DNA from: Ylistrum balloti
Lineage: Eukaryota
Assembly (NCBI RefSeq): GCF_031769215.1
Contig: NW_026782015.1
Span: 930,001 to 994,000, forward strand
Length of the DNA stretch: 64,000 nucleotides
Reading direction: 5' to 3'
Part shown: positions 1,743-50,300 of the stretch, piece by piece
Numbering within the stretch: the stretch's first letter is position 1
How the letters are laid out: each line of letters starts with the position of its first letter
Translations under genes and position numbers: made by a program
The notes under the pieces: generated by a model
The model's database searches: none
The model's input: only the letters and a program-made list of their open reading frames with translations
What the model was told of the DNA's origin: nothing

Positions 1743-2339
1743 TCAATGCTGGGACGAATCATCATTAGATGACCCCTGACCCTGATTGACGTTTAGAGTC
1801 TGTAACAGTGGCAACAGTCCAGAAAGCAGTGGCATATTGGCCTGTGGCTGAGGTAGGGTTTGCTGTGCCAGTCCTCCCAAGTACGGTGGCATTCCCATCA
1901 TAAGCTGATTCCCTGCTAGGTTAGTCTGCATGAAGTTCATCAGTTGGGGTGTCATACCTGCCTGACTTGTAGCAAATTGCGGGTTCATTAACTGGGGTGT
2001 CATACCTGGCTGGCTTGTGGCCATATATTGCAGGTTGACATCAGGGGTTCTTGGAGCGTTGGTGTACTGCTGGTTCAGGACACAGTGAGGCTGCTGAAAT
2101 GGAACTGAGCCTCTTACAAACTGATTTGTCAGACTCGGAATCTGTGCCCCTAAATGGGCCTGAGGCAGCATCATGGTCTGTAACAGCATCTGTTGTTGGG
2201 CCAGGGTGTTCAGTAGTTCCTCATTGGTAGGGGTAGTCAACTGACTGGAGGTGGCAGGATTCGTCTGATACAGTTTATTCTGCATAGGGGCAACAACATT
2301 CGTCTTAATGGGCGACGCATTGGATGTAGATGTGCCCAT
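1743..2339 (-). CDS. TDRD5: TDRD5-like exon 22 (terminal, Q/M/P/N-rich low-complexity tail, stop at 1743)
   Basis: Acceptor TTTATAG|ATG at 2340/2339, phase 0 matching exon 21; 198-aa open frame to TGA. Confidence 0.75.
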   Translation of the reverse strand: MGTSTSNASPIKTNVVAPMQNKLYQTNPATSSQLTTPTNEELLNTLAQQQMLLQTMMLPQAHLGAQIPSLTNQFVRGSVPFQQPHCVLNQQYTNAPRTPDVNLQYMATSQPGMTPQLMNPQFATSQAGMTPQLMNFMQTNLAGNQLMMGMPPYLGGLAQQTLPQPQANMPLLSGLLPLLQTLNVNQGQGSSNDDSSQH

Positions 2340-5300
2340 CTATAAACATGCAACAGATATATAAAAATGTTCATGTAATTTTTACTGAATCATCCAGTCA
2401 AAGATTGGCCTGATGTCTGGTATTATATTAATTGCTGTTCCATTCACAAGACAATTCAATGAAAGTGAAGACAAGACCACATTTACTGTATGTTTTTAAT
2501 CCTTGGTAATCAAAATGAATATTGAGACAGCCAACTAACTACTTTCACATGATATGATTTTTATATGAAACATAATGGAATACAAAAGTTGTAACAACAG
2601 ACCATTATTACTTAACAAAACATATCAAATTTTTCACTGACCTGTGGTATTCCCTTCAATGGAGACACTCGGATGTGGTCAAACACGTCCTCAGAAACAG
2701 CAGCTTTAATTTTGTTATCTGTTGTGGCAACTCTAGTTGGTCCTGGAGGACTTGATGTTATTTTCTTTTCTGGACTGTCTGGGTCCAGAGCTGTAGAAAA
2801 TACACCAAATATATTCACATCAGGCAACTAAAATAGGAACTGTTGTAACAAATAAACAGTCGATAGTCATCACAGGGATTCAGTCACATCGAACTCTCAT
2901 CACAGGGATTCAGTCACATAAACCTCGTATCACATGAATTCAGTCCATAAACCTCGTATCACTGGAATTCAGTCACATAAATCTCTCATTACAGGGATTC
3001 AGTCACATAAACCTCATCACTGGATTTCAGTCACATAAACCTCTCATCACAGGATTCAGTCACATAAACCTCTCATCACAGGGATTCAGTCACATCAAAC
3101 TCACATCACAGGGATTTTGTCACACCAATCTCTCATCACAAAGATTCAGTCACATAAACCTCTCATAACAGGAATTCAGTCAGATAAACCATTCATCACA
3201 GGGATTAAGTCACATCAAACTCTCATCACAGGGATTTCGTCACATAAACCTCATCACAGGGATTTAGTCACATAAACCTCTCATCACAGGGATTTAGTCA
3301 CATAAACCTCATCACAGGGACTCAGATAAACCTCTCATCACAGGGACTCAGTCACATAAACCTCTCATCACAGGGATTTAGTCACATAAACCTCTCATCA
3401 CAGGGATTTAGTCACATAAACCTCTCATCACCGGGATTTAGTCACATAAACCTCTCATCACAGGGATTTAGTCACATAAACCTCTCATCACAAGGATTCA
3501 TGCACACATAAATCTATCATCACTGGGATTTAGTCACATAAACCTCATCACAGGGATTTAGTCACATAAACTTCTCATCACAAGGATTCAGTCACATAAA
3601 CCTCTCATTACAGGGACTCAGATTCAGATATATGCATTTTGTATCTAACTCTATCAAACTGAATTGAATACAATACAACATATGATTTTACTACCAGTAT
3701 CCATGTTTCGTTCAACACTGTGATATAAGCACCGAAAAAAGGAGCAAAATTAATCATTTCTTGAAAGGGTCATAACACTTCATAATTGCATATTCTGTGT
3801 AACTGACTTTCACCTTTACGCTGCCGTTGCTGGTCCTGCATGTCCCTCAGTACACTTATCTGGTCCTCAACTTCCTTCAGCTGGTTCATATCATTCTCCA
3901 TATCTTCTGGGTGAGTCATCAAATTTTGAAGAATCCTTTTCCTAGAAGAAAATAATATGACAATTTTCAAAACAAATAAACAACAATATATCCTTATCAT
4001 TGGTGCAGCTAAATGTGTTTTCTGGATGCTGACTTTATAAGTAAAGAATATTAGAAAAGTACAACAGATATGTCATCCACATCACAGTAATTTACACTTC
4101 AGCGACTTTGTCAGAAGAGTTATCAGAAAAGTAACATGAGAGTGTTATCCACATCAGAGTAATTTACACTTCAGCGACTTTGTCAGAAGGAGTTATCAGA
4201 AAAGTAACATGAGAGTGTTATCCACATCACAGTAATTTACACTTCAGTGACTTTGTCAGAAGAGTTATCAGAAAAGTAACATGAGAGTGTTATCCACATC
4301 AGAGTAATTTACACTTCAGTGACTTTGTCAGAAGAGAATATTGGAAAAGTTGTTAAAGTTACTGTGTTGTTATAGTTACCGTTTGAACTGCAGGAGCTGG
4401 AGACTGTGTTGTTATAGTTACCGTTTAAACTGCAGGAGCTGGAGACTGTGTTGTTATAGTTACTGTTTGAACTGTAGGAGCTGGAGACTGAATTGCTATA
4501 GTTACCGTTTGAACTGCTGGAGCTGGAGACTGTGTTGTTATAGTTACCGTTTGAACTGCTGGAGCTGGAGACTGTGTTGTTATAGTTACCGTTTGAACTG
4601 CAGGAGCTGGAGACTGTGTTGTTATAGTTACCGTTTAAACTGCAGGAGCTGGAGACTGTGTTGTTATAGTTACCGTTTGAACTGTAGGAGCTGGAGACTG
4701 TGTTATAGTTACCGTTTGAACTGTAGGAGCTGGAGACTGTGTTGTTATAGTTACCGTTTGAACTGCATGAGCTGGAGACTGTGTTGTTATAGTTACCGTT
4801 TGAACTGCAGGAGCTGGAGACTGTGTTGTTATAGTTACCGTTTAAACTGCAGGAGCTGGAGACTGTGTTGTTATAGTTACCGTTTGAACTGTAAGATCTG
4901 GAGACCGAGTTGTTATAGTTACCGTTTGAACTGTAGGAGCTGGAGACTGTGTTGTTATAGTTACCGTTTGAGCTGTAGGAGCTGGAGACTGTGTTGTTAT
5001 AGTTACCGTTTGAGCTGTAGGAGCTGGAGACTGAATTGCTATAGTTACCGTTTGAACTGCTGGAGCTGGAGACTGTGTTGTTATAGTTACCGTTTGAACT
5101 GCTGGAGCTGGAGACTGTGTTGTTATAGTTACCGTTTGAACTGTAGGAGCTGGAGACTGAATTGCTATAGTTACCGTTTGAACTGTAGGAGCTGGAGAGT
5201 ATGTTGTTATAGTTACCTTTTGAATTGTAGGAGCTGGAGACTGAGTTGGATATCTTCCAGACTGACTTGAAAGTCTGACAAGTCCTCACTGGCCTGACTC

Positions 5301-8300
5301 TCTGAGTCTGGGTAGTCCTCACCCTGAAAAATCCAGGAGCATTATTTCAGTGAAAATCACATATTGTTAATTATAACTACAATTAAAAAAAAAAATAAAA
5401 ACAGATATAATTAGATCTATTTAAATGTGACTGTTTCACATGTTAGTGTACATACCTTCCAGTAGGGGTCACATGGGTCAAACATCTGGATAAGCTCTTT
5501 CACATTGGTTCGTAGCTCCTGACATTGGTGCTCAAACAGATCCAGAATGAACGGCACCCTACAAAGAGAAAGTTGTCTCCCATACACATTAACTATCTGA
5601 TATCAGTGGGAAGAAAGATGAAATGGTGAATAATATAGATTAATTTTATGACATCAATATATGAAGAAAGACAGATTCAACACCTGTGTATATGATTTGT
5701 TTGAAGATTGAAGGACTAGGAATCCAACACTTGAATGGGGAAAGCTGACGGTTCATTACGACAACAAAAGAATGAGTAAAGCAGAAATTATTTATCCCTT
5801 GGTGGAGTTTAAGGTAAATGGAAGAGTACCTGTCAGCCCAAGAAATAATAATCAAGAGGGCAAATGGGCCTGTCTCACTCATCTGGTATAGTATCATAAC
5901 ATCTCACAAAAACATTAGCATTTTACATCATTGGCATTCCAGCCTTGGCTGATAAGATTAAGTTGTTAGAAGTTTTCAACAAATTTGACCCCATGACCTT
6001 GAATAGTTGTCAAAGTTTTTTTTTCTTTTCATAATCTTTGATGAGATTTAACTCCAGGAACTATCAACCAAATGTCATAACACTGGACATTTTAGTTCAT
6101 AAGAAGAAGTTGTACAAAAGTTTTAACCAATTTGATCCCTTTTAACCTTGCGTATGGCTTATCAATTCATCTCTTTTCCAAATTTTGTCACCATTAATAA
6201 AAGAAACTTTCCTGTCAAATAAGATTCTGCACCTTTTGATTATCAGATTTAAGTCTTTTGATGACTTAAACAACTTTGACCCCTGTGACCTCCAATATGA
6301 GTCAAAGTCATTTCTTTTCCTCGTCTTTGTAAAGCTTCAGCCCAGGAACTTTCTAGTTAAATAATGACTCTAAGCCTTTTGGTAGATCAGAAAATGTTGC
6401 TGAAAGGGAAAAGTTGAAGCCAGACAAACAGACAATGGCCACCCACCACAGCAGAAGTCAATAAGCTATTAAATTATCCATTTTGTTATATAAGAAACCC
6501 TAAGAATTAATATCTTGGCACAACATCAGAATGACTTTCAATACTTACCTGTTGAGTTCATACAATGAGATGGACTTCTTCTCATTGTCTTGAAATACAC
6601 CACATCTAAAATATAAAGACATCCTTAATTAAAAACAAGATAACCCATTCCAACTTAAGATGGGAAAAAATATAATTATAAATTTGACAAAGTAAAGGCA
6701 AAAGCAAAAAAGACAATGGACTTATCTGATAGGGGAGTGATCAGGGCATAACATCACTATCATATATAGCCACCTCAATCTACAGGGAAGAAAGAACCAG
6801 GTATAAATATATACAACCACAAATATGGATTACCTCCCTTTATCTGTTTCTCTAAAATGTACTTACTGACGGAGATCCTCAAACACTTCTGGGTATTTGT
6901 CCTGTCTCAGAGTCAGTCTGCTCACAGGTATGTTTTGTTGTTCCAGCTAAATATAACAGAAACAGGCACATCAGTCCAACACAAAGAGTTAAAAATATCT
7001 TTGAGGATATTTCAGTTGGTACAACAATACTTCAGTAGACATGAGAGAGAAGACATTGTCTTACCAGTTCTTTGAGGATGTCAGCCTCCCAGAGGTAGAC
7101 TAACACTTAAGTAAACCTGACAGAGAGGACAGTAACTTACCTCATCTTGGAGGATGTCAGCCTCCCAGAGGTAGACTAACACTTCAGTAAACCTGACAGA
7201 AAGGACAGTAACTTACCTCATCTTGGAGGATGTCAGCCTCCCAGAGGTAGACTAACACCTCAGTAAACCTGACAGAGAGGACAGTAACTTACCATTTCTG
7301 TGAGTATGTCAGAATCCCAGAGGTAGACTAACACCTCAGTAAACCTGACAGAGAGGACAGAAACTTACCTAATCTTGGAGGATGTCAGCCTCCCAGAGGT
7401 AGACTAACACCTCAGTAAACCTGACAAAGTGGACAGAAACTTACCTCATCTTGGAGGATGTCAGCCTCCCAGAGATAGACTAACACCTCAGTAAACTTGA
7501 CAGAGAGGACAGTAACTTACCTCATCTTGGAGGATGTCATCCTCCCAGAGGTAGACTAACACCTCAGTAAACTTGACAGAGAGGACAGAAACTTACCTCA
7601 TCTTGGAGGATGTCAGCCTCCCAGAGGTAGACTAACACCTCAGTAAACCTGACAGAGAGGACAGTAACTTACCATTTCTGTGAGGATGTCAACCTCTTAG
7701 AGGTAGGCCAACACCTCAGTAAACCTGACAGAGAGGACAGTAACTTACCATTTCTGTGAGGATGTCAACCTCCTAGAGGTAGACAAACATCTCAGAAGAC
7801 TTGAGAGAGAAGACAGTATCTTACCGTGTCTGTGAGAATGTCTGTCTCCTAGAGGTTGATCAACAATTCAATAGTCATGAGAAAGAGGACAGTAACATAC
7901 CATGCTTGTGAGGATGTCTGCCTCCCAAAAGAATCCCGAAATCTCGCCAGACATCAGATAGGCAGTATCATTAAGGTTGATCAAGTTAACGATGTGTTCT
8001 CCTGTAAGCTGGATTCTGTAATACAGGAATCAGAATGCATGCACATCAAATTTAAAGCACATTCTGTAGAACTGATAGAAAATCATCATGTTCCTGGAAA
8101 ATTTAATTCTTCTTGGCTTGTATCATTTTCTTTAACGCATGCACTCAGTTACCAGTCCAAAAACTTACGGTTGAACAAAACGTCTGCTTAATTCTCGTGT
8201 CTCAATCTTGTTTTGCACCTGTGGCTGGACAGGCTGCTCCACTCCCACTTTGGGTTTAAATCCTTTTTCATAGACATAGGAATAGTCTGGCACCTACACA

Positions 8301-11300
8301 TAAAATTTTACAAATGGTGACTCAGGTCAGAAATTTTAATTAAAAGCTCTGATCAAGATGAAGTTACAACGTTTTCTCGCCCGCTTCAAAGATGCGTTCC
8401 AAGTTTTGATAGGGAAACATAACTCTTTCTTTCCGGAAAGGCAGTTCACGTGCACCTTTATTCTAAAAAAATTCTTAAAATCATCAAATGTGATGGAAGT
8501 CTTTATCCCCATAAACAAGATCATGATGCACTCTCAACAGAGTTTATTAATATGACATTTTTAATGGCCCGTCAACACATAAAAGATCTTTAGGGCCATA
8601 AACCAGTAAAACACACAGCAATCCAAAAGGAAATAACATCAAACAAACTAAAAGGTAAAAGACAAATGCTAAAAATGTTCAATGGTTATATCATCACAAA
8701 AGATTAAAATGGTTAGTCATAATATATTATATAGACCAAATTCTTTCAGATAACCTACGATTTTACAAAATCCAAGTCTCAACAGTTTCAAAAAGGGTCT
8801 TAAGACTTGTAATGTTACAATGTAGTGTTTATTGTTTTATTCTGCATAACCATATGCATGTCACAATTGGATACCATAAATCAATGTTGTCACACTCCTG
8901 ATCGACCAATGATGATCCAGTATTTGATGTGAATCTGAATACTAATAAATCATCTCAACCCTTGGAAAAGGACTTTCAATGTTTGGCACTTGACAACGCC
9001 CAATATCTTAAAGATGTTTTGTGTATTATCTCATACCAAGGATAGTTTTAATTTGTAAAGTTTACCAAGTGACTATGAGAGAATTAAATCTATGAAAATC
9101 CATACCTTCTAAGCAAAACTGAGGTTCACCACAATTTTGGCATCTGATTTTAGATTTAATATATCATACTGTTAACCTGGTAAAATATTAGCCACAATAT
9201 ACCCCTCAGTTAGAGAGAACTTAATTGAGCGTCAGGCTGATAAGACAAGAGTCTTGACTCGAATTTTGCAGAGGAATTGAAAGAAAAAATTACTTCCTTC
9301 ACAATACTTTTTAAACTGAACTGAAGTACATCACAATTTTTCCATCCAGATTTGGGTTAAATACAGCCATATTTTATAAATTTGAGTTAAGGCATACCTT
9401 TGGTCAAATATACCATATCTTTAAAACTTTATTGAATTCAAGAGTACATTTAATATGTATTATACCAGTAAATTCGGATTTTTACCTGGATTACCTAATC
9501 AAACCATTAATATGTTGTCGCTGTACCATTGCCGCTCACATTTAAATGGCTATACCATGCCAACTTTATGAGGTCGGATCACCACCCTTCAGCAGTAAAT
9601 GACCGACTTTCCCTTATCATTGATCTTCACTTCAATATACTGCTAGTCACCGAAATCAATCTCACTCAGGATAAGTAAATAACAAGTCCGTGTTGGAATC
9701 GTACTGCTATAGTGATTCTCAGATGTATAAGTGCTTCACCAATATACTTAGCTGTGATAACTACAATATCCGGGACAAGTTTTATCAACTTCAGTAAAAC
9801 TTTGGACGTTAAAACACGTCATGGTCTCTACTCCACTTCTATAGCCTTCTAATGCCGTTTTTATCAATGTCTTGGCCCTTTTCTGGCAATTAGCCAACAA
9901 ATGTCTATTTCTGAATCAGTTTTACAATTATTGCCAACAAAATAATTCATTTTATAATTTAATGATAACTTGGTAACCCCTTTAGCTAATGGTAGGACAA
10001 ATAATAAACACAGTAAATAAGTAACTCAACTATTCAAGGACTAGAATTCATCTGTGCTGCAAATTTTAAAAGCAGTTGTTGGAATTAAACATGAATATTG
10101 AAAAATGAATCAAAATCATATTTTCAAATCAAAATTTCAAAGAAAAATCAATTTCACTATGTATTTTGTCTTTTTAATAAAGGGGTATGGGAGTGGGTGG
10201 TAAGGGTGTTGGAGGTATATTCAGCATTCAACATTTTGAACAAGCAAACTTTAGAAACGATATCTGTGGAACAGTTAATGTAGAGTTACAAATTTCATCA
10301 TTTCATCAGGCTACAATGTACTGTAGAAATGTTCTCTCCTAGTCTAAAAACTATAATGATTACTATAACAATAATTGTGAGATATCAAGTAAACAAAACA
10401 GTGAAACTGCAATTAGCATAATCATATGTTAGTGCAATACTTTCAGCACAAGAAGTGTTAAAATAAAATTACCACTAAAACATATTCATTCACAGTAAGT
10501 GAAATAGATTTTATCTAAAATCTGATTTCACTTCATAGATGGGCTTCATGGATACCTATATAGACACTGCCCTCCTGTGATGTACTGCTATACAAAGTCC
10601 ATACATCAAAAATGCACATATAATGCATTTAAGGTCAAGGTCAAATATCCAATGAAGGTTACAGTATCCCAACTTGAATATAGAACACATTGCCTCCTCA
10701 TGTTGTACTTATTTCCCACTGATGGGAGATATATGGTCTGAAAACCTGTATTTCGTTTTTAATTTAGAATTTACAATCGTGCAAAGTAATGCAGAAGTTG
10801 CAGTGACCTCAATTTAGTACCTAACACACTGTCATATTCTGATCATGTTTTACAAATTTCTATGTCCATATGTTAAGGAAGCACATGATTAATATGATGT
10901 ATCACTTTTGACATCAGTTGATGCAGGTACAGAAGATAAAAAGAGTACAGGTTGGTAGTAATCATACCTTAAGCTATATAAGGTGGGAGTATATGGGAGT
11001 TAAGTAGATGGGAGTTTTGATTATTATATATCATTATACAAATGCCCTATCCAACAATGACCTGACAGAGTGACCTACCCTTGGTACTGATGAGACAGAA
11101 GGACTGAAACATGAACGAAACATTACACACCCACAGCCCTGATCAGTAAATGTATGTATTGGAAAAGTCTGATATTGGTTAATTGTTGTAGTAAATGTCC
11201 CTGCAGACAGGTTAGCAGGCTTGTGTGTATATATAATGAAAGTCAATACCTAACTAACATACATGTAGCAGTGAAAAATTGGCTGTCACCAAAACAAATA

Positions 11301-14300
11301 TATCAAGCAACTTACTTTACCTATACCAGAACCTACGTAGGATTATAGGTAATTTAAAATATCTTTTATCTATCTGATTGAATACCAAATGTTAGCTGTC
11401 AATGTGCAGAATGTATCGCCCAACAGACATATTGACATTATTGTGGAAACCCAGTGAGGCGACTCTCTACAAGGCTATGATTTAAGTCAGTGAGGGGACA
11501 GACCTAGGTAAGTCATTCCCCACATTGGGACTGAGCCACGCCTGACCGCACCTCCACAGGGCCTACTGGACAGACGCGGCCCAGATTATATGTATTGTGC
11601 CTGTTGGTATTTTGTATTCCTGGTCTTAGTTAATGTTTGCACTGGAGTTTATGAGGAGATTAACTGGGGTCAAATCTTTGTGAGCAGGACTGTCCACCCC
11701 AGGGAGTGCTGAACTCTACATGTATTGTTGACACTGGACTTAATACTCTGGACTTACTGTACGCTGCAGACTTCAATATATCACTCCATTCTGATGTCCA
11801 ACATTTGAAGGATTAGAAAAAAATTTCTGACATAGGTGAGTTAATGCAAAAATGCAAAATCATAATTTGAGATGAAACTATATGGGACAATGCTTTCCGA
11901 AGGGCAATGGTAGAACATGTACAATTTATACACACTGTCAACATGGCTCTCTTTGGTAGTAACAGGGGGACACATGAGGACAGTTTCTGTAAACAAGGCT
12001 CTCTTTGGTAGTAACTGGGGGCACATGAGGACAGTTTCTGTAAACAAGGCTCTCTTTGGAAGTAACAGGGGGACACATGAGGACAGTTTCTGTAAACAAG
12101 GCTCTCTTTGGAAGTAACTGGGGGCACATGAGAATAGTTTCTGTAAACAAGGCTCATTTTGATAGTAACAGGGGGACACATGAGGACAGTTTCTGTAAAC
12201 AAAGCTTTTTTTGCTAGTAGCAGGGGGACACATGAGGACAGTTTCTGTAAACAAGGCATTTTTTGCTAGTAGCAGGGGGACACATGAGGACAATTTCTGT
12301 AAGCATCACTCTCCATGGTAGTAACAGAGGGACATATGAGGACATGAGTTTCTATAAACAACTCTCTTTTTTAGGTCCCTGTATCAAAAAGTATGGGGGG
12401 TTGTTAAACAAAATGAAATGTAAGATATGTTAATCTTTTTTAAATTAATCAAAATAGTAGGAAGAGCACAACAGCTGAGGCCAGGTATAGTAATACTGTG
12501 ACTGCCGACATTTTTTAAAATTATTTAAATCAAACAAAACTAAGCTACTATTTCTTGTATATTGATAACTATTATAAACAATTAATTTCAAATTTTCTAA
12601 ATTTTTCTGTATTCCTACTGTTCTCTAAGGAATGACCTGTTTGAATGCCAGGGTCACAAATTAGTAGGAGGTATTTCTGATGTACATGTACTGATATGCT
12701 GTGAGGATCAAACGATTCAGTCAGCCTTAAAAGAAACCTTATAGCACATGCTTCAGTAGAAATGCTATATATAACAGGATATCAAATTATGAATTAGTAA
12801 TTAACAGGTAGAAACTATGAACATATTAGATTACAATGACTGCATACCATTTCACTTATATCCAATCAGATACCAGTACTGTAGACTAAAGTATATACTA
12901 CTTGGAAAATTGGTTTCAGGTGTTGCTTTTTTTCCTTAATATTTGAATTTTGGATTTTAAGTGGACTGTGTATACCAATATGGGATCACCCTAAAACCTT
13001 GTACACAGACACTTATAACATATGCTCATTGGACATTTTCTCTGCTGGTATTATATAAAATTTGCTTGTCTTGTCCAACTGCAAAATGTGATCAAAATCT
13101 GGGCAAGACTTTGGGAGAGGTGGGTCATAATCACCTCAATTATTCCTATTGGATCCTGTCCGTCTCACCCTCAGGGTCACAGCTACTATAATTGTAAAAC
13201 TATGATTGTCCTCCCCCAAATATATTTTCAAACTTGGTTAAAATCCATTCAGGAGACAGGTGGAGTAAACTTTTTAAAGGAGTCATTCATGGACAACACA
13301 CAGAACATAATATGGTTATAGCCATTCTGACGACTTTGATAACCAAACAAAAAATCTCAAAGGATATTGGTACAATCATGGTACAATCTTAATTAATTTT
13401 ATTTAAGTTTTTGTTCATTATTTCACTTATTTGCTCTGAATCATCCATTATGTTTTTTTTTTCTGTTATTACCAAAATTGAACATGCATGAAATTTGAGA
13501 AAGACCCCTCGGAGGTTTAAAAAATTGTGATAACAATATTTAACTGTGTAGATATAAGAAGAAGATGTCTGCCTATATTGTTAATTCTATATTACTGATC
13601 AATCCCAAAATTTAACAAATACAAGTAAAAACAATGGGAACATACACATGACGTTTGAAAATGATCTCAAGAGAAAGTGATTAAAAGAAGAGGATGGATG
13701 GACAAGTTATAGACCAATGAAGGGCTACTAGTAAGCCAATCATTTTATAAAAGTCAGAAATATGAAAAGTAGTGGTCAAGGTGTAGGAAATATCAACACA
13801 TCTGTCTAAGAGTTGATATGGCTTGAGGAGGAAATACCAGGACTAATGTTGTGTGGGCAGTACCAAAGCTTGAGGAGGATAGGTTCTTAAAGCCAACAGT
13901 GCCAAATGTGATCACATGATATACACAATGTCTGGCTACCTTTTATAACATTGTATTTTTAACACAGATATTTTACGCTATACTTGCGTTTTGCTTGTGC
14001 CACTATTGAACATATGCCACCTATATTAACCTCTGTCTACTAATTCTATGTATCTCTACCAGAGCCCAACACTATGACTATTGTTATGGAATATCATAAT
14101 GCCTCATTAAATTGCAATTAGTTAATAACTTTTGGCCTACATAAAATCCTTGTGTGTATATCATACTTAAAACTATGTACCATCACACCTCTTAAATATG
14201 TAGCACCTGAACTTTTGTCATGTTGATGTTTATTCATTAAACAAGTGTGTCCAGGGTTCTGCTGTACAATCTAACTAAACATTTGCATCTGTGAGGAAAA

Positions 14301-38300: not shown

Positions 38301-41300
38301 GATCAAACATCAAACACTAGAGACAGTACACAATCATTCAAACAATAGATCAAACATTAAACACTACAGACAGTACACAATCCTTCAAACAATAGATCAA
38401 ACATTAAACACTACAGACAGTACACAATCCTTCAAACAATAGATCAAACATTAAACACTACAGACAGTACACAATCCTTCAAACAATAGATCAAACATCA
38501 AACACTACAGACAGTACACAATCCTTCAAATAACAGATCTGAAATCAAACACAAGAGACATTATATGATCCTCTAAACAATGAATTAGCAGTTATCTGTG
38601 GTCAGTTGACACAGATCTAGCACAAGAGTTATACATACCATTTCAAAGCTGGCTAAGGCTATCAGGGGTCTGTTAGTGACTACGTTTAAGAACCTGTTTC
38701 TAGCATTCAATGTCCAGTTCTGTAAAGATACCAAATCATTATGTAAAATATAAAGCATCAAAAGTCATCACACCTCCAGTCTAACAATAATCCCAAACCA
38801 GTGATAATCTGTACTTACATTTTCAGGGCAATGCCACTACATACGCTAATGAATAAAGTAACATAATGGTAAGACATCCATAGGGTGACCATTATAACCC
38901 CATCAGTACAACACCCATAGAGTGACCATTATAACCCCATCAGTACAACACCCATAGGGTGACCATTATAACCCCATCAGTACAACACCCATAGGGTGAC
39001 CATTATAACCCCATCAGTACAACACCCATAGGGTGACCATTATAACCCCATCAGTACAACACCCATAGGGTGACCATTATAACCCCATCAGTACAACACC
39101 CATAGGGTGACCATTATAACCCCATCAGTACAACACACTGAGAAGATAAGAAAAGAGTCCATCACATTCATTAACAAATTAATTATTTTTGTGTGTTATT
39201 GATAAATTACACAAAAAGCAAAGTGTACTCCTGGCATAACTGCAAGCTTACACTAAATTTTAGTGTCAATGCTCAATAAAACAAGAAATCACTGATGCTT
39301 ATCCTTAAATAGACACTGCCTGTTATCTACTGTCATTCTAATACACTTCAAATAATGCCATTTCAATATAAAAGGATAGCCGTACACTAACTCACTTATA
39401 GTTCCATGCTTAAAGTACAACAGTACACATACTCCCTTATAGTTCCATGTTTAACTTACAGTAGTACACTCACTCCCACACAGTTCCATGCTTAAAGTAC
39501 AACAGTACACTTACTCCCACACAGTTCCATACTTAAAGTACAGCAGTACACTTACTACCACAGTAAGTTTCATGCTTAACTTACTGCCTTATAGTTCCAT
39601 GCTTAAAGTACAACAGTACACTTACTTCCACACATTTCCATGCTTAACCTACAGCAGTACACTTACTCCCACACAGTTTCATGCTTAACTTACCGTAAAT
39701 ATTCGCGTATAGTGCCCACCCGCGTATAGTGCGCAGGTACTTTTTGGAGATCAGATTTAAAAAAAAAAAATTTACAGAAAAATTAATTGACTGGTCACTG
39801 CGACGAAACATTTGATGTGGTCTGATCCATTAATAATTAGGAAACCACAATGAGCGTGACCCTAACACATGTAATTACCTTAAGTAAACAAATTTACCCA
39901 GGTGACCTAACAAGCATGAAAGGCTTGGCTGATTGTATAATTAACGGTTAATGACAGTTAACACGTTGAGTATGAGGAGACTGATGACACCCGGCTTGGG
40001 CTGAACGCGTACTATTGGTCAGAAAATGATGTTGTTTTAACTGTCTGATTATTTTCAATCCTACCTTGTCCCCATAAAAGCAGGTGGTTTGTTCAGTATA
40101 GGCATGATCTTTCATGGTATCTGTACCCACCGCGGTATCCGAAGGTATTTTATGATAGATTGTTTACACCGACTTCGACATGGGGAAACTGCGAACGCCA
40201 TTTGACTACGCCGAGAGACTGGAGTTTCGTGCCGCCGGTCGCCATTTCGACATTCCAGAGTGAAATATCAAGGCACGGAAGAAAGAAAAGACCGTCTAAA
40301 GTCCCAACCACTGACCAGAAGGGCTGACATAGGTGCGACAGTGAAACACACAGAGATGTATGCGATCGCCGATATCCCGGCATCGCTGCCAGTACAACAG
40401 AACTGCGCGTGCGGGCCATGCAGATCAAGAGAGGTCATGGGGTCACCAACTTTTGGCATCGGTGGGATGGGCTGTCCGATTTATGAACAGAACGACAATC
40501 GCCTAAAAACTTCCGGATTCATTGAATTCCACAGATACAACATCATCAAAATGAGGCAGAAATTCAGACACTACTATAGCCCCGACCAATAGTAAGACCG
40601 ACGGGAAACGAAAAAAAATTAGATTCACCGTAATGCTAGCGTGAATGGCAGATGATTAAAACATTCGAAATTTATTTTATTTTTCTGTTGTTTTTATCTC
40701 CAAACTATCATATAAGACCGACGACTTTTACATATAACTATATGAAGGGAGGTAATCCAATATGGCGGATGCAGAACTCGGGAATGATAACCCCAGGAAT
40801 GGCATGTACCTGCGTATAGTGCGCAACCCCTTTTTGACACGACAGTTTCAGCTTAAAAAAGTGTGCACTATACGCGAATATTTACGGTACTCCCTTATAG
40901 TTCCATGCTTAAAGTACAACAGCACACTTACTCCCTTATAGTTCCATGCTTAAAGTACAACAGTACACTTACTCCCACACAGTTCCATGCTTAAAGTACA
41001 ACAGTACACTTACTCCCACACAGTTCCATGCTTAAAGTACAGCAGTACACTTACTCCCACACAGTTCCATGCTTAAAGTACAGCAGTACACTCACTCCCA
41101 CACAGTTCCATGCTTAAAGTACAACAGTACACTTACTCCCACACAGTTCCATAATTAACCTACAGCAGTACACTCACTCCCACACAGTTCCATGCTTCAA
41201 GTACAGAAAGATCACTTAATCCCTCTCAGTTCAAAGCTTAACATACAGCAGAACACTTACCTCCTCCAGAGGCTGTAGATGGGCGAGGCGAGCTTGTATA

Positions 41301-44300
41301 GCTTGAGCTGGCAGCTTCAATAGTTTTGATCTGAAAAACAGAATCCATTCATTTCAGTAAGTGTAATTTCATACAGAGACAGAATGAAACATGCACTGAA
41401 GATAATTTATCCCCTCCCTATTATTCTCTCCCCAGTGTAATCAGCAAGACATTGTAGGTAGAATGTCAGGTAAACAGGGAAGTGAGGCTCCCTTCTGGTA
41501 CCAAAGTCAAGTAAAGATCACATCCATTGCCAACTTTCCTTCAACAGAGGCTGTTTCAGAACTTTCATTGAAATTGGTTCATTTGTTTAAAAGTTAACCA
41601 GGTTATCATTCAAAATGACGGTGCAAAAGAAGAAAAAACACAAAAGGACAAGTGTATCAGTGAAACTGATGAATGTTCCCTGAAAACAACTGTATAGGAC
41701 AAAACAAAGGGCAATAATTCTGTAATTAATTGGCTGTGGGTAATGAATTTGGTACACTGCTAATTCCCTTAATATGACTAATGTATACACCAAGTTTCAT
41801 TATCCTAGTTTTAATGCAAGCAAAGCTACCTGGTATGCTTATTACATAAAATATTAACAAAGGGCAATACCTATGTATTGAGGGATCATGTGTCCTTACT
41901 CTGTTACACTGCACCTTGATTTTGCATGACTGATGTATACATCATGTTTTAGTATCCTAGTTTAAATGCAGGTCAAATTATGCTACGGACACAAAATTTT
42001 AACAAAAGGCAAACTGTGATTAAGACAATTTTGATGTTGACCCTGAAATTGGTACACTGCACATTGCCTTTATATGATCAATGTATACACCAAGTTTCAT
42101 TATCCTACCTTAAATGCAAGTTATGGTCTGGACAAGATATTTTTATCAAAGGGCAATAACTCTGTAATTTAGGGGTCAAGTGCCCTAAAATAGGTACATG
42201 GTTTCATGATCTTTGCTTAACTGTGGGCAAAGTTATGCTTCAGACTTAAGTGGACAGAAAGAAAGATGGACAGACGGACTGACAAAAAAGGTGGCGACCA
42301 TATGTTCAAAAATAAATGTAAAACTTCCCTAAAACTTTGTCATGAGAAATATTGCCTTCTTCACAGAAGATATTGCTACACGACATCTTTGTGATTAATC
42401 AACAGTAAGGTGTGAGGAAAAAGAGCTTTCTACTACCTTTTCCACCAAGATCACTTACCTAAGAAGTCGGATATTCCGTCTGTGAACCAGTAAGGTGTTT
42501 CCAAAGTCTACAAAGTACACCTAAGAAAGAAAACAAAACTGGCTAAAATCCCTTTATCAACAAGGAAGGAGAGGAAAGCTGATTGAGCTCATTCCTCCTG
42601 ACAACTGTAAAATATCAAATACCAGACATATTTATAAGTCACATTCCTAGGTCTTTATCACTGACCTATAAGGACTTACCTCCACATATTTGTCTACGTT
42701 GAGAGCTGAGACCACACATCGATGCCAGTTGTTATCCTCTGGGAAGATGGCAGCAACTATTTGACCAACAATCAGTAAGTAGTCGGGCACCTTGTACTGG
42801 TCACCTTCAGCACTGCAGTATAACTTCCTGAAACATGCAAATCATCCTATGATGAAAATGCTGCCAAAGCTTCAAAGTGCATGAGTGAAACAAACATGGT
42901 GCCAGTATAGAAAACAGAGCACATTGAAGTATCTGCAGCACCAGCAACTTACAAAAGCTAGGCCTAGACATAAATTGGTATAATATTCTCTTGCCTTTCT
43001 TCTTCAACATTGATGATCAGTAATTATCCCTGGCTACTGACAACTATTCAATTACTTGCTTGTTGATCCAATTAGCTGGGATTTATTATTATTATTATTC
43101 TTTCAAAGTAACTTAAACAATAGTGACCAATAACATTTCATCAGCTCATAGAGCAATGCAAGTTATCAGTTCTCAACCATAAAGTGTATGTTTTAAACTG
43201 ACGAGTCATACTGATACTAGAAGTTGTAGTAGCTAGTGGTTGTCATAGTCACCTTTCTAGCCTTGGCTAGTGGGAATTTCTCAGTAGTAGAATGTCGGGC
43301 TAGAGACCAGGAAGAAAAAAGAACTCAAGCTATAGGCCTAATTTAAACCCCAGCAGCTAGGAACTATGTTTTCATTACTCCTTCGAATTACATCTGTATA
43401 TAAAGTATATGCATCAAAATCCAAGCAGATCTAAATATTTTCATTTTGAATTCAAAATATGAACCCATCACGTCTTCAACAGATCTATCTACCAATGAAA
43501 TTTTATGTTGATAACTCTTATAGTTTTTGTGTTATGCTTTGGACAAAATTATGACAAACGGACAGACGGACACACAGAGCAGTGACTATAAAAATCATTT
43601 AGGCCTATTAGGTGTCCAAGCATTTAAACATGCTCTTCATGACATGCTGTAAATTCATAATTAGGCCTATAAGCTTATGACAAAACATGAACATGTAATC
43701 AGAACTGTCGCCCATATTAAGATAATTACTAACCTTTATTAGCACATATCTGATGAAGTAATCTAACGACTGCTTTGTTCCATCTAAGTAGTTTGCAGAC
43801 TGCATTTAATTTCTTTAAGCAATAAATCTGTCACACTCTTGATCATTTTCTCGTACAAACAAAGTTTAAGCTTATCATCAGAATTAAGTATAAAAAGCAA
43901 ACTCCACACTAGTCGGTGTTGTTTCATATTTAAGTTTTCATAAACATTTCAAATAGTTCATTGTTAAATAATTTTTTAAAAGGAAAAGTATTTCAAACAT
44001 ATATTTGATAAATCAAGTAAAACCTTTATCTTGGAGGCATAGTGGTACCACAGACTTAGATACTGATAGCAATTCCATGGCGGTTAGCCTGCTGAAAATT
44101 AGACTAAAATACAAACTTCCACTGGTAGAATTATGTCGAAAATTATTACTTTTTCAAATAAGCACAATCATCTCTACAATACTGATATTTTCCATCGAAT
44201 GATCAAAAATATATATAAACATCTTTTCAGTTATGTCATGGAATTAAGACCTTATCACAAAATATCTCATGTATAAGAAACTTGAAAAGCATGGATGAAG

Positions 44301-47300
44301 GGAGATAAATCGAACAATGTATACAGTATGATTTTTCTTCCAAACTGAGAAGAAGCGTAGTAATGTCTGTAGAAATAAATCCATTAGTCATTTAAAACAC
44401 GACATCTTGTATCATTTTTACGTTTTCTTTTTATCTATATATTTTCTATACATATATTTAAAAATAACAGCGACAACTACTTCAGGAACAAATTTTAAAA
44501 TACATTTTATATCCTTTTCGTGAAAGTACTTGTGCATTGTTGGGTCTTGTTGTGGTGTAAAATTTGGTCCAAGCTATAAATAGCCTAGCTAAATAGCAGC
44601 TGATCCTGAAGATGGCTACACATGCTAAGCACCCTATAGATGCACAGAGTCTAAATAAAAACAACAATAATGAAGTATTTTCAGATTTGCACTTGGAATC
44701 AAAAATGAAATTTGATCATGTTCATGTAGCTATGATTTTACAGTTTGCCAGTCTGAATCATCTATGTCATAAAATATTAGCATTATGCTGCTAATAGAAT
44801 TTGACCTCTGTGACCTTGACACTTGGCATGGTCTGCTCAGATTAGTTGCTATACATAAGTATACCCAAACATGGCTGCTCTCTTTACTTACTCTAATTCA
44901 TTCATACACTTTTCAAGGGCTAAAGTTGTACGTTTCCCACGCAGCTGTATCCAGAACAGACCAGGCGATACCACATTTGAAACAAATATTTCTATGTATT
45001 CATTAAGGGGAGGTAACTCTAGAGGTTTGTAGAACACTTTCGGTCCAATAGCATCTGAAGGAATGTTATTTGTCTTATCTTTGTCCTGCAATATAAAAAC
45101 ATTTGAATACTGACTTAGTAAGCACTAGATTAAAGGTACAATTATCTTAAATATATTCTGTTAAACTCCCTGTACATAATAAATGTTAATTGAACCAAAC
45201 TACAATACACTTATCAGAAAGAGCAGCATACTAGAATCTTACCTTGGCTTGTGGTGTCTTATCTTGTCATAAAATGTCTTATCTTGTCCTGTAGAATCTT
45301 ACCTTGGCCTGTAGAATCTTACCTTACCTATGGTGTTATAATTAACCTGTCATATTGTGTCTTAATTCATAGTATGGTGCTTGTGTTTTAATTGACCTGT
45401 CATATTGTGTCTTAATTCATAGTATGGTGCTTGTGTTTTAATTAACCTGTCACATTATGTCTTAATTCATAGTATGGTGCTTGTGTTTTAATTAACCTGT
45501 CACATTATGTCTTAATTCATAGTATGGTGCTTGTGTTTTAATTAACCTGTCACATTATGTCTTAATTCATAGTATGGTGCTTGTATATTAATTAACCTGT
45601 CATATTATGTCTTAATTCATAGTATGGTGCTTAAGGATGTATTCCTCTGATGTTTTGACCAGAAGTGAGACATAATTCAATGTAAAATGAATTCCAACAC
45701 AATATCTTTGACTTTTGTCTTTTTATATACTTTATCTTCTATAGTTGTATTCATAAGTTAAAAAAGGAGGATTTATATGTTTTGAAGAAATTTCACTTGG
45801 TTAACAGTGCCAACAATTTCAATATCTTATTGATTCTAAAGTAATTCCCTTGAGTAAAACTGTGGAAGTTTTTGGTAGATTTCAACGAACTTTTGCAGGA
45901 ATTATTACCACAAACCAAAATTTCAAATATGTGAATTCCAACTTGGTGACCACTTTCCCTGATTGTTAAGACCCGAAAATAAATATTTCAGCTGGTTTCT
46001 TGATCTTGGAAAAACTGACTACCTGGGTGAAAATTGCAAAAGCTAAAATAGAAAATTTCTCTAACAAGATTTAAAGTCCTCAAAAAAGCTTGACAATACA
46101 GGATGGTCAAAGAAAAAATTTATGTCATTTTGGAACATTTTCATTTTAAGGTTTCTTTGCAGTTAGAAGCTCGTTAAATCAAATGAAAAACTTAGCATCT
46201 TCAAATGATTTTTTAGACAATGTCTGTTATCCTGGGAAAAAAATGAGAAAAATATATGGAAATTAATTATTTCCTATGAATAATTATCTATTACATATAT
46301 CCTGTACCAGAAAAAGTTGTGCAGCAACATCTTGATTTTTTGCTTGTAATCTACTATTTAAAATCAAACCTTTCAAAATTCTTCACCAGAAAAAAAAGTT
46401 AAATACTGCTTTTGATTTTGTACTTCTCAGGAGTACATCCTTAACTCCAAGGATTCTTTACTCCATTTTAGTCTAACTTCACCTACTTCCAAAATAAGGG
46501 CATCAAACAAGGAACACTACCTAAGACACCTCCAGTTGGTCTTGTTGCCTTTGTTATCACCTACTGAACATTTCTATATAAAGAAACTCAAGATATCTTC
46601 AATAATTATATAACAGTCCTGCCTTCAACATTTTCAATTCTTACCTCATCTTGTGGAGGGTTGATGATAAGATCTCTGCGAGGTGGTTTCCCTGTGTTCA
46701 GAGCATATACCAACATACAACCTGTCGGTACAATACATACTCTCTAAATTACTTTTAAAACAAATTCAACAGAATTAACGACATGTTATCAATAGTCAAA
46801 GAAAGACAGTGAATAAACAGAATTTTTACAACTTGTACATGTTTTCTAATTTTAATCTAAGATGTGGCATTTTCATGTATTTTCCACAGTACTACCATTG
46901 TTTCGTCATACTACCGAAGCATTTCCATATCATAACCATAGTACTTCTGCAACACTACCCACACGAAAACTGTTTGAAAACGTTCAGTCAAAAAAATTTA
47001 CGGATCATCAATTTATTAACTGAAAACATTGTTTTGATCTTATATACACACCAGATAATACATCTCAATATTATGATTTAATTGTATCCAATATCAAATC
47101 TCGGAAATATTATCTATATGGTTTAAATGGTTTCCAAAGAGTCTGCATGTATATATGTACAATTTGTAATTACATCACACCAATAACATTACCAGTCGGC
47201 GGTGTGCCACATTCGTTTAAATTTATTTCTGATGTAACATGGTCAGTGTTAAAGAAATAGCTGTTATTATGTTATTTCAATGCAATAGCATACAATAACA

Positions 47301-50300
47301 TACAAGCTCCTCTGAGCTCATTTGTATTCCAAATGTACAACAAAGTCTGTGAGTAGGATCCTGGTAGGGACAGATGGACAGACAGAAAGACAAAGAGAAA
47401 GAGGAAGTATGGTATTACCGTCTCCTTTGTATTCCAAATGTACCACACTGTCTGTGAGTGGAATCATAAAGAACTCAATCTTGTCGTAGCCTAGTTCTCT
47501 AAATGGCAACACCTCTCCTGTCAATTCCTGTAACAAAATAATTCCTATCTTACATCAGAATAATTCAATATGCTTGTCATCAAACTAGCTATTGACTAGT
47601 AATTAGAGAACTATGTTTACATACTTCACTATGCAGAAGTTTATCATATAGAATCACTAAAATTGTCTCCACTATTCATGTATTTATTCGTTTATTTTCA
47701 ATATCCTGTGAATTGCCAGGGTCACTTTGTACATTACCGTAAATTTGCGGGTATAGTGCGCAGGTACTTTTTTGGGGTCAGATTAAAAAAAAAAAAATTT
47801 CTACAGAAAGATTAATTGACTACTGGTTACCGCAATGAAACCGTTGTGGTTTGATCCATTGATAATTAGGAAACCACAATCATAGTGACCCTAACATATT
47901 TAATTACCTTATGTAAACAAATTCACACAGGTGCCGGACTTAACAAGCGTGAAATGCTTGGCTAATTGGATAATTAACGGTTCTGTAAAGGTAACAAACA
48001 CGTTGAGTATGAGGAGATTAATGACACCCGGCTTCGGCTGAACGCGTACTATTGTTCAGAAAATGATGTTGTTTTAACTGTCTGAAAAGTTTCAATCATA
48101 TCCTGTCCCCATACCTGTACCTATCCGAAGGTACTTAGCTATAGACTGTTTACACCGATTTCGACATGGGGAAACAGCGAACGCCATTGACTATGCCGAG
48201 AGACTTGAGTTTCGTGCCGCTGGTCGCCACTTCGACATTCCAGAGTGAAATATCAAGGCACGGAAGAAAAAAAAAGACCGTCTAAAGTCCAAACCACTGA
48301 CCATAAGGGCTGACATAGGTGCGACAGCGAAACACCCAGAGATGGAGAGAGAGCTGTTCAACTCTGTATGCGATCGCAGAGATGCCGGCATCGCTGCCAG
48401 TACAACAGAACTGCGCCTGCGGGCCATGCAGATCAAGAGAGGTCATGTGGTCACCAACTTTGGGCATCGGTGGGATGGGCTGTCTGACTTTTGAACAGAA
48501 CGACAATCGCACAAAAACTTCCTGACTCATTGAATTCCACAGATACGCCATTAAAATGAGACAGAAATTCAGACACTACTATAGCCCCGACCAATAGTAA
48601 GACCGTCACTATTCGAACGACGGGAAACGAAAAAAAATAGATTCACCGTAATGCTAGCGTGAATGGCCGATGATTAAAACATTCGAAATTTATTTTATTT
48701 TACTTTTTTGTTGTTGTTGTTTTTATCTCCTAACTATCATATAAGACAGACAACTTTTATATATAACTATGTGAAGGGAGGTAATCCAATATGGCAGACG
48801 CAGAACTCGTGAATGATAACCCCAAGAATGGCATGTTCCTGCGTATAATGCGCACCCCCTTTTTGACATGACAGTTTTAATTTGAAAAAGTGCGCACTAT
48901 ACGCAAAAATTTACGGTACTTGTAATAGCTGGTGGCTCTCTCAATGAACCATATATGGGAGACCCATCAAATGCCATCTAGAGTAATCAGGGTTAAGTGT
49001 CTTGACGAAGGACACAACCATGACATAGAGCAGTCAGTTTCTCAATTTCCCGAGACAATTAAAATGACATTGGTAGAAAGCATTGAATCATGCACTTAAG
49101 ATTTTCACCTTAGGTTACCTTATATAGGCTGGAAAACTTGTTAAGAAGCAAAACTATATATTTACACCTGTACACCTTACCTTACATAGGCTGGAAAACT
49201 CATTGACAAGCACACCTCTAGCATTACACCTGTACGCCTTACCTTATATAGACTGGAAAACTCATTGAGAAGCACACCTCTAGCATTACACCTGTACGCC
49301 TTACCTTATAAAGGCTGGAAAACTCATTGAGAAACACACGTCTACGTTTACACCTGTACATCTTACCTTATATGGGCTGAAAAACTTGTTGAGAAGCAAA
49401 CCTCTAGGTTTTCAAGCTAAAAACTATACACCTTACCCATTACAGGCGGTAAATTGTATTCAGAAACACACCTCTAGGTACACATTGTTACACCTTTACA
49501 CCTTACCTTATATAGGCTGGGAAACTCATTGAGAAGCACACCTCTAGGTTTACACTGTAGCACCTGTCTAATTTTTTCCTCCAGTTGTGAATCAAACTCT
49601 CCTCGGCTGCTGTATCTTCCTTTGGAATGTATCTCTATTCAAGATAAATAATGAGAGCTGCAAGATGCCCTGACCATCCATACTATGTTAACGATAGTAA
49701 CACCAGTTAAATCTAGCATCCAATTATAAATCACATGCCCCTTTCTTAATTTGGTATCACATTTCAAATCTGATACTTTAACATTTATTTAACATTTTAC
49801 TTTAACATGCTTTCAAAGGCTTCAAACATAAATACATATGTTAAAACTTTTAAATTCAACTTTACTTCCCTAATCGTTCAAACCATGAAACAATGTCTGT
49901 TCAAAATTGTTTATTTAATTGACCCTTCCTCCAAGTGTCTTAACAGACTTGTTCAAAGTATTGGGACATATTCAATAACAAAGTACCTACCAGTATTAAC
50001 TATGACTGGGGGGAGGGGGTCAGAAATTCATTTATAACTTTATCTATTTTACAACAACAGCACGAGACATCTTACTGAGGGAGGAAAACCCCATGTGGTT
50101 GGACAGGTGACCCCTACCCTTTCACATCCATTAACGGAATCAAACTCTGTATGACTAGGTGAAAGGCTACCACCCTAAAATCTATGTCATGTGCATTCTA
50201 ACATCCCCTTCCCTCTCGCCGTACTCCCCTAAATAATAGTCAACAGGCCAAAAATGTTGTCATGATTGCACCCTCTAGAGCACACATACCTCTTCTTGTG

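What the first reader, a model, noticed from the sequence alone, without database searches (positions are those of the whole stretch)
4345..49506. Gene-wide system: minisatellites seeded on the splice junctions of TDRD5 (ladders of decoy splice sites)
Seen: five independent arrays with unrelated units (62 bp at exon 5 donor, 41 bp at exon 11 donor, 47 bp at exon 13 acceptor, 76 bp at exon 15 donor, 42 bp at exon 19 donor), plus partial junction copies at exons 6 and 8, all begin exactly at a real exon boundary and amplify the splice site with flanking exon sequence into the intron; together ~100 extra splice-site copies. In four of them each unit contains a GT...AG pair only 13-24 nt apart, and read-through or decoy use hits a stop within a few codons. 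The coding exon itself is never expanded. Inference: either a junction-biased repeat-birth mechanism (e.g. R-loop/spliceosome-stalling or slippage in a germline-transcribed gene, akin to intron gain by tandem duplication) filtered by selection, or a functional decoy/ratchet architecture in which VNTR copy number tunes splicing and NMD of a piRNA-pathway gene.
Basis: partly seen in the sequence, partly recalled or inferred. Interest (0 to 1): 0.85.

Follow-up and report, generated by a model that had tools for sequence, protein, structure and literature searches.

The report
Splice-junction minisatellites in scallop TDRD5
In this scallop's TDRD5 gene, five introns are swollen by tandem repeats copied from their own exon-intron junction (about 100 spare splice sites). 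This kind of repeat is real but already known ("mirages"), is reported across this genome, and shows no sign of being a TDRD5-specific regulatory device.

Summary
The window is Ylistrum balloti (scallop) DNA. TDRD5 lies on the minus strand with 22 coding exons (52565-1779).

Five unrelated minisatellites are built from the gene's own junctions: E5, E11, E15 and E19 donors and the E13 acceptor. The authentic site is always the exon-proximal copy, and there are about 100 decoys. Using a decoy donor would give a stop within 1-10 codons.

Two sub-claims fail. The exon 6 and exon 8 "copies" lack the splice site. Exon 13 is not untouched: its 3' end is replaced by one array unit with an in-frame TGA.

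The "gene-wide decoy system" reading is not supported:
- Arrays make up 32% of this gene and 44% of the Pecten maximus ortholog, against 4% in oyster and 13% in mussel (neither has a junction array).
- Pecten shares only the 76-bp E15 array, has a different array at E11, and has one at the E5 acceptor instead of the donor.
- Decoy GT/AG columns are no more conserved than other columns.
- Enrichment depends on the null: 5 observed against 0.97 expected (P=0.002) with uniform seeds, but 2.65 expected (P=0.06) once the tiny pre-expansion introns are accounted for.

The kind is known from amphioxus "mirages" and the human F7 IVS7 repeat. This scan has already noted it in many other genes of this genome.

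The parts
1779..52565 (-). TDRD5-like gene, 22 coding exons. E1 52565-51533; E2 51205-51063; E3 50848-50792; E4 50482-50290; E5 49634-49507; E6 47527-47419; E7 46721-46645; E8 45085-44892; E9 42827-42680; E10 42520-42459; E11 41330-41261; E12 38719-38639; E13 36365-36267 (core); E14 8293-8169; E15 8015-7901; E16 6946-6867; E17 6605-6549; E18 5558-5456; E19 5323-5217; E20 3941-3814; E21 2790-2642; E22 2339-1779.
   Evidence: Exact threading of P0155. Alignment of the relative's mRNA L002 and of P0154. Pfam finds LOTUS x4 and Tudor.
49115..49565 (-). 62-bp minisatellite spanning the exon 5 donor. The authentic junction is the first copy, followed by 6 decoy donors.
   Evidence: 59 exon nt lie inside the array.
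47317..47360 (-). Single intronic copy (86% identical) of the last 44 nt of exon 6, 105 nt downstream. The donor itself is not copied.
45232..45325 (-). 20-bp repeat in intron 7 whose units resemble the first ~15 nt of exon 8. The acceptor is not copied. Weak case.
40888..41260 (-). 41-bp minisatellite starting at the first base of intron 11 (block a). Each unit starts with a GTAAGT or GTGAGT donor-like motif.
39371..39693 (-). Block b of the same 41-bp array, separated from block a by a transposon insertion.
39691..40889 (.). 1.2-kb non-autonomous element with 29-nt terminal inverted repeats (97% complementary) and TA flanks, inserted into the 41-bp array.
36352..38581 (-). 47-bp minisatellite filling intron 12: 48 decoy copies of the exon 13 acceptor (20 intron nt + 27 exon nt) plus the authentic last copy.
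36209..36266 (-). 3' end of exon 13, replaced by about 1.1 units of the 47-bp repeat. In-frame TGA at 36263-36261. The ancestral donor region (AAAGAG|GTAAGC) follows at 36209/36208.
   Evidence: score 51 against the unit, shuffle maximum 31; no significant match to the Pecten exon end.
7032..7927 (-). 76-bp minisatellite spanning the exon 15 donor (62 exon nt + 14 intron nt per unit): authentic copy plus 11 decoys. It fills intron 15. Same period and register as in Pecten maximus.
4361..5248 (-). 42-bp minisatellite spanning the exon 19 donor: authentic copy plus 20 decoys.

Best explanation
These are 'mirage'-type minisatellites, by-products of a very high rate of small tandem duplication in scallop introns.

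Proposed sequence of events:
1. A 40-76-bp tandem duplication happened to span an exon-intron junction. This is geometrically likely because the host introns were only about 90-460 nt long before expansion.
2. The duplication was then amplified by slippage or unequal exchange into 7-49 copies.
3. Only arrays that grow into the intron survive. The spliceosome goes on using the exon-proximal copy: the first donor, by 5'-to-3' scanning or exon definition, and the last acceptor, next to the real exon body. Rare use of a decoy gives a premature stop and is presumably removed by NMD.

The arrays evolve in concert, can persist for a long time, are hit by transposons, and can occasionally damage the exon (the exon 13 tail). 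They are not a device of TDRD5.

Shown: the anatomy, the ancestry of the exon ends, the species comparison and the statistics. Inferred: the duplication mechanism, the splice-site choice and NMD.
For: - The exon ends inside the units are ancestral. They align to a related scallop's mRNA and to Pecten exons right up to the junctions.
- The authentic site is always the exon-proximal copy.
- Scallop loci are saturated with minisatellites: 18 array blocks (32% of the gene) in Ylistrum and 25 blocks (44%) in Pecten. The oyster ortholog has 3 arrays (4%) and the mussel ortholog 6 (13%), and neither has a junction-spanning array.
- Pre-expansion intron lengths were 90, 134, 180, 461 and 1590 nt. Given the host intron, 2.65 junction-spanning arrays are expected against 5 observed (P=0.06). 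In Pecten the figures are 2.22 against 3 (P=0.35).
- Births are lineage-specific and occur at either kind of site. The E5 donor, E13 acceptor and E19 donor arrays are found only in Ylistrum, and the E5 acceptor array only in Pecten.
- Decoy GT/AG columns are no less variable than 16-51% of other adjacent column pairs.
- Read-through or decoy use meets stops within 1-10 codons.
- Published precedents report that such arrays do not disturb splicing: amphioxus mirages (PMC3087553, PMC3902484) and the human F7 IVS7 repeat, where the most upstream donor wins (PMC1557585).
- Earlier scan notes list the same arrays in many unrelated genes of this genome. I did not verify these.
Against: - Under a uniform-seed null over the whole gene, the excess is about 5-fold (0.97 expected, 5 observed, P=0.002). 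Some bias towards junction-proximal sequence or short introns is therefore not excluded.
- The 76-bp E15 array has the same period and register in Pecten, although the two species differ by about 0.47 substitutions per 4-fold site. This long persistence could also reflect selection.
- No transcript data from this species were available, so silent decoys and NMD are inferred.
- The NCBI model ends at exon 13, so normal splicing across the exon 13 region is unproven.
Confidence: 0.7

Rival explanations
1. A junction-biased birth or retention mechanism. Tandem duplications arise, or survive, preferentially at exon-intron borders of transcribed genes, and selection only trims the outcome. Possible causes are replication or repair problems at sites of co-transcriptional splicing or R-loops, or a retention advantage because deletions reaching into the exon are lethal.
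For: - The uniform-seed null gives a 5-fold excess (P=0.002; P=0.014 if E11 is left out).
- Junction arrays arose repeatedly in both lineages of this one gene. The E11 donor carries arrays in both species with different periods and no detectable unit homology, so they may be independent births at the same site.
- Several scan notes describe the same phenomenon as 'more frequent than chance' elsewhere in this genome (unverified).
Against: - Conditioning on the host intron removes most of the excess (P=0.06; Pecten P=0.35).
- 12 of the 17 distinct arrays in this gene do not touch a junction, including all 8 in intron 13.
- The window was selected because it looked striking.
- One earlier follow-up in this genome found frequencies matching random duplication in short introns.
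Confidence: 0.22
2. A functional decoy/ratchet architecture. The arrays act as U1 or 3'-splice-site sinks, or as recursive splice sites, and their copy number tunes TDRD5 splicing and NMD.
For: - Decoy donors at E15 match U1 better (7-8 of 9 positions) than the authentic site (6 of 9).
- The E5 and E15 units contain a CAG|GT motif, preceded by a pyrimidine run in the E15 unit.
- The E15 array is retained in two diverged scallops.
Against: - There is no extra conservation of decoy GT/AG.
- The CAG|GT motif of the Ylistrum E15 unit is absent from the Pecten unit.
- Arrays sit at different junctions in Pecten, and no junction-spanning array is present in the oyster or mussel TDRD5.
- The same repeats are reported in housekeeping genes.
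- GT...AG spacings of 13-24 nt are too short for introns, and an AG is expected by chance at such distances.
- In human F7 the pseudo-sites are silent (PMC1557585).
Confidence: 0.05
3. An assembly artefact: the arrays, or their copy numbers, are mis-assembled repeats.
For: - Tandem arrays are error-prone in assemblies.
- The odd exon 13 tail lies next to a 2.2-kb array.
Against: - An independent assembly of another species (Pecten maximus) carries the same 76-bp array at the same junction and similar arrays at other junctions.
- The arrays show internal variant structure, and one contains a transposon insertion.
Confidence: 0.03

Closest known systems
Amphioxus 'mirage' minisatellites (Adh3, globins BflGb6 and BflGb9, troponin C, PGBD5). 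Sources: PMC3087553 and PMC3902484, which cite Canestro et al. 2002.
   Same: - Tandem repeats whose unit spans an exon-intron boundary, at either donors or acceptors.
- Splice signals are repeated.
- Units evolve in concert.
- Reported not to disturb normal splicing.
   Different: - Here the host is a mollusc.
- Five arrays lie in one gene, with up to 49 copies.
- One array is shared between two species that differ by about 0.47 substitutions per neutral site.
- One array appears to have overwritten part of the exon.
- Length instability was not testable here.
Human F7 intron 7 37-bp VNTR (PMC1557585).
   Same: - The first monomer contains the exon-intron junction.
- It is followed by identical 5' pseudo-sites.
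- This provides the mechanistic precedent: the most upstream donor is chosen.
   Different: - A single array of 5-9 copies in a mammal, with splicing tested by experiment.
- Here splicing was not tested, and some decoys are stronger than the authentic donor.
Intron gain by tandem duplication across AG|GT proto-splice sites (the Rogers model, as discussed in PMC3087553).
   Same: Tandem duplication creates extra donor and acceptor pairs next to an exon.
   Different: No new intron or exon has been created here. The decoys lie in pre-existing introns, and the GT...AG distances within units (13-24 nt) are too short to splice.
Recursive (ratchet) splice sites. Basis: established knowledge from Drosophila and vertebrate long introns; no paper was read on this here.
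   Same: The Ylistrum E15 and E5 units contain juxtaposed CAG|GT, with a pyrimidine run before it in the E15 unit.
   Different: - The host introns are about 1-2 kb, not tens of kb.
- The motif is not conserved in the Pecten unit.
- There is no expression evidence.

Membership tests
Mirage-type (junction-spanning) minisatellite | Head-to-tail array of a 10-160-bp unit inside a gene. | tested here: met
   TRF and in-register copy tables give periods of 62, 41, 47, 76 and 42 bp with 7-49 copies.
Mirage-type (junction-spanning) minisatellite | The unit contains the exon-intron boundary, and the authentic junction is the terminal copy of the array. | tested here: met
   Exact exon map and ortholog mRNA. 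Exon nt inside the arrays: 59 (E5), 14-27 (E13), 27-62 (E15) and 32 (E19). E11 is borderline, with at most 11 nt of exon similarity.
Mirage-type (junction-spanning) minisatellite | Splice dinucleotides are repeated in the copies. | tested here: met
   GT is present in 6/6, 11/11 and 20/20 donor decoys. AG is present in 47 of 48 acceptor decoys. About 15 GT-containing copies lie at E11.
Mirage-type (junction-spanning) minisatellite | Regular splicing is not disturbed. | not testable with these tools
   No transcripts of this species were available. Indirect evidence only: the NCBI model uses the authentic sites up to exon 13, and exons 14-22 keep an intact, conserved ORF.
Mirage-type (junction-spanning) minisatellite | Length instability or polymorphism. 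| not testable with these tools
   Only a single assembly was available.
Regulatory splicing VNTR / decoy splice-site array | Decoy splice sites are under constraint beyond the array background. | tested here: not met
   16-51% of adjacent column pairs are as invariant as the GT/AG pair.
Regulatory splicing VNTR / decoy splice-site array | The architecture is conserved in orthologs. | tested here: not met
   Only the E15 array is shared with Pecten. The E5, E13 and E19 arrays differ between the species. The oyster and mussel orthologs have no junction-spanning array.
Regulatory splicing VNTR / decoy splice-site array | Copy number is linked to isoform ratio or expression. | not testable with these tools
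   Needs population long-read DNA and RNA data.
Recursive splice sites | A conserved pyrimidine tract followed by CAG|GTAAGT-like sequence, in a long intron. | tested here: not met
   The motif is present in the Ylistrum E15 and E5 units but not in the Pecten E15 unit. The introns are about 1-2 kb.

The most novel reading that the evidence does not exclude
Scallop genomes may have a mutational or retention bias that seeds minisatellites on splice junctions of transcribed genes several-fold more often than uniform tandem duplication predicts, for example through replication or repair trouble at sites of co-transcriptional splicing. Some of these arrays would persist over about 0.5 neutral substitutions per site. 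This would be a lineage-wide link between splicing and tandem-repeat birth, and a natural library of hundreds of competing splice sites.
Probability: 0.22. Interest if true: 0.65.

Novelty: new member of a known kind. Interest (0 to 1): 0.35.

Why it matters
If the arrays are only tolerated clutter, the value is practical in three ways:
- They explain truncated or odd gene models in scallop annotations. Here the NCBI TDRD5 model stops at exon 13.
- They warn that repeat masking hides real splice junctions.
- They offer natural test cases for how the spliceosome picks one site out of 7-49 near-identical ones, including decoys stronger than the real donor.

If a true junction bias exists genome-wide, it would point to a new source of tandem-repeat birth tied to transcription or splicing. 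The exon 13 case also shows that such arrays can corrupt coding sequence, which is a cost that has not been emphasised for mirages.

Tried and rejected
- Constraint on decoy splice sites: column-variability test, no signal.
- Homology of the Ylistrum 41-bp and Pecten 45-bp E11 arrays: not significant outside the donor hexamer. I do not claim they are shared.
- Two short mussel arrays near junctions (L004 16260-16376 and 17707-17840): wholly intronic, so not mirages.
- Pecten 22-bp array 34 nt after the E9 donor, and the array in the neighbouring bromodomain gene (L001 78414-78737): neither is derived from a junction.
- Search for further scallop orthologs to date the arrays: only Pecten maximus and one transcript were found.
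- The 'partial junction copies' at exons 6 and 8: these are exon-only copies without the splice site.
- Mapping the ZIP gene upstream to test its arrays: only two exons were placed by Pfam, and I did not pursue it.
- Literature searches for junction minisatellites in scallops or molluscs: nothing relevant found.
Full report
**Identity and gene model**

The window is eukaryotic. It has no N, about 37% GC, and more than 20 minisatellites. ORFs on the minus strand carry LOTUS domains. A full-database HMMER search and two word-based searches led to molluscan TDRD5 proteins. One of them, P0155 (NCBI 'tudor domain-containing protein 5-like [Ylistrum balloti]', 799 aa), matches the window at 100% identity.

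Exact threading of P0155 gives exons 1-13, all with GT/AG borders. A 5-kb mRNA contig of a related scallop (L002, encoding P0154, 1345 aa) aligns exon by exon and fixes exons 14-22. These form a 475-codon ORF without stops that is 74% identical to P0154.

**The observation**

In-register copy tables show the following:
- **E5 donor (49507):** 62-bp unit (about 42 exon + 20 intron nt), 6 decoys.
- **E11 donor (41261):** 41-bp unit that begins at the first intron base, with at most about 11 nt of exon similarity; about 15 decoys.
- **E13 acceptor (36365):** 47-bp unit (20 intron + 27 exon nt), 48 decoys. The authentic copy is the last, and the array fills intron 12.
- **E15 donor (7901):** 76-bp unit (62 exon + 14 intron nt), 11 decoys.
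- **E19 donor (5217):** 42-bp unit, 20 decoys.

That makes about 100 decoys in total. The exon parts are ancestral, because the related mRNA and the Pecten exons align right up to each junction. The arrays therefore derive from the exons and not the other way round.

An AG within about 24 nt is expected by chance, and such distances are too short for an intron.

The 41-bp array is split by a 1,199-bp element with 29-nt terminal inverted repeats, so it was once a single array.

Two sub-claims fail:
- The exon 6 and exon 8 'junction copies' hold exon sequence only.
- Exon 13 is not untouched. After its conserved 99-nt core, the last 58 nt match the 47-bp unit (score 51; shuffles have mean 14 and maximum 31). 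They do not match the ancestral exon end seen in Pecten and the related mRNA. This creates an in-frame TGA, at which the NCBI model ends.

**Is it more than chance?**

Arrays occupy 32% of the gene (18 TRF clusters, 17 distinct arrays). I tested two nulls.
- **Uniform seeds.** I collapsed every array to one unit and dropped a seed of the unit's length uniformly on the collapsed gene, excluding wholly exonic seeds. This gives 0.97 expected junction-spanning arrays against 5 observed (P=0.002; P=0.014 if E11 is not counted).
- **Conditioned on the host intron.** Before expansion, the host introns were very short: 90, 134, 180, 461 and 1590 nt. Conditioning on the host intron gives 2.65 expected (P=0.06).

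For the Pecten ortholog the two nulls give 1.18 and 2.22 expected against 3 observed (P=0.11 and P=0.35). Much of the 'exactly at the boundary' effect is thus geometry: a 40-76-bp duplication in a 100-200-nt intron includes a junction about half the time. A residual bias towards short introns or junction-proximal DNA is possible but not established. The window was also chosen because it looked striking.

**Comparison with other species**

The Pecten maximus ortholog (L001; same 22 exons) is 44% arrays.
- At the E15 donor it has a 76-bp array with the same 62+14 register.
- Ylistrum decoys are 68% identical to Pecten decoys and 64% identical to their own authentic junction. Pecten decoys are 96% identical to theirs.
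- With 4-fold-site divergence of about 0.47 between the species, this fits one old array that was recently re-homogenised in Pecten.
- At the E11 donor Pecten has a 45-bp array. Its unit shows no significant similarity to the Ylistrum unit beyond the donor hexamer. This means either independent birth or divergence beyond recognition.
- Pecten has a 54-bp array on the E5 acceptor and none on the E5 donor, E13 acceptor or E19 donor.
- The oyster (L003) and mussel (L004) orthologs are 4% and 13% arrays and have no junction-spanning array.

The architecture is therefore not a conserved property of TDRD5. It is part of a pectinid load of minisatellites, with births at both donors and acceptors.

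**Function**

Decoy GT/AG columns are no more invariant than 16-51% of other adjacent column pairs. At E15 the decoys match U1 better than the real donor (7-8 of 9 positions against 6 of 9), which is also true of some silent pseudo-sites in human F7. The CAG|GT 'ratchet' motif of the Ylistrum E15 unit is absent from the Pecten unit. Nothing points to a decoy or ratchet function, but no RNA data could be consulted.

**What is known**

[quoted passage not shown] They occur at both kinds of boundary, evolve in concert, and are reported not to disturb splicing (PMC3087553 and PMC3902484). The human F7 intron 7 VNTR starts with the authentic junction. There the most upstream donor is chosen by an oriented scanning process, even against stronger downstream pseudo-sites (PMC1557585).

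I found no report of these repeats in molluscs. Earlier notes of this scan describe the same arrays in many other genes of this genome, including housekeeping genes, BAG6 and an SLC15A4-like transporter, and reach the same classification. I did not verify those loci. The 'mirage' lead came from one of those notes, and I confirmed it in the papers.

**Verdict**

The repeats are junction-spanning ('mirage') minisatellites: local tandem duplications in short introns that are tolerated because the exon-proximal site is used. They are common in this scallop lineage, sometimes old, and occasionally damaging (exon 13). The TDRD5-specific, piRNA-related or decoy-system reading is not supported. A general junction bias in repeat birth remains an open question that needs genome-wide data.

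Noticed in passing
window 26749-29028 (+); L001 31814-40948 (-); L003 21957-33487 (-): An intronless RING/B-box/NHL (TRIM-NHL-like) ORF of 759 aa lies antisense inside the 28-kb intron 13 of TDRD5. A RING gene sits antisense in the matching large intron of the Pecten and oyster orthologs, so the nesting looks old.
   Followed up: partly
window 36209-36266 (-): The 3' end of exon 13 is overwritten by one unit of the neighbouring 47-bp array, giving an in-frame TGA (36263-36261). The NCBI protein ends there, yet exons 14-22 keep an intact, conserved ORF. Exon 13's 99-nt core is phase 0/0, so a weak donor at 36267|36266 or skipping of the exon would keep the frame.
   Followed up: partly
window 39691-40889: A 1.2-kb element with 29-nt terminal inverted repeats and TA flanks, with no Pfam hit in its ORFs (MITE-like, Tc1/mariner-style), is inserted into the 41-bp array.
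   Followed up: partly
window 23070-26439: About 80 copies of a 42-bp C/A-rich unit (GC skew about -0.78) end roughly 300 bp upstream of the nested TRIM-NHL ORF. No junction is involved and its origin is unknown.
   Followed up: no
window 59679-61054 (-), 60810-60872: A ZIP zinc-transporter gene lies upstream of TDRD5. Pfam Zip hits fall in two ORFs, and an 18-bp x 3.5 repeat lies inside the larger Zip-matching ORF.
   Followed up: partly
window 56497-57367: A higher-order repeat (periods of 23, 82, 105 and 187 bp; 97% matches at period 187 bp) lies between the ZIP gene and TDRD5. Its relation to any exon was not determined.
   Followed up: no
L001 60-8587 and 66765-69136: In Pecten, a composite of 33-bp and 145-bp satellites is repeated several times upstream of TDRD5. 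The 145-bp satellite recurs inside intron 17, which looks like a satellite carried by a mobile element.
   Followed up: no
window 2867-3621 and 4030-4350: Two further arrays (30-bp and 72-bp units) fill most of introns 20 and 19 without containing a junction. The introns of this gene consist largely of arrays.
   Followed up: partly
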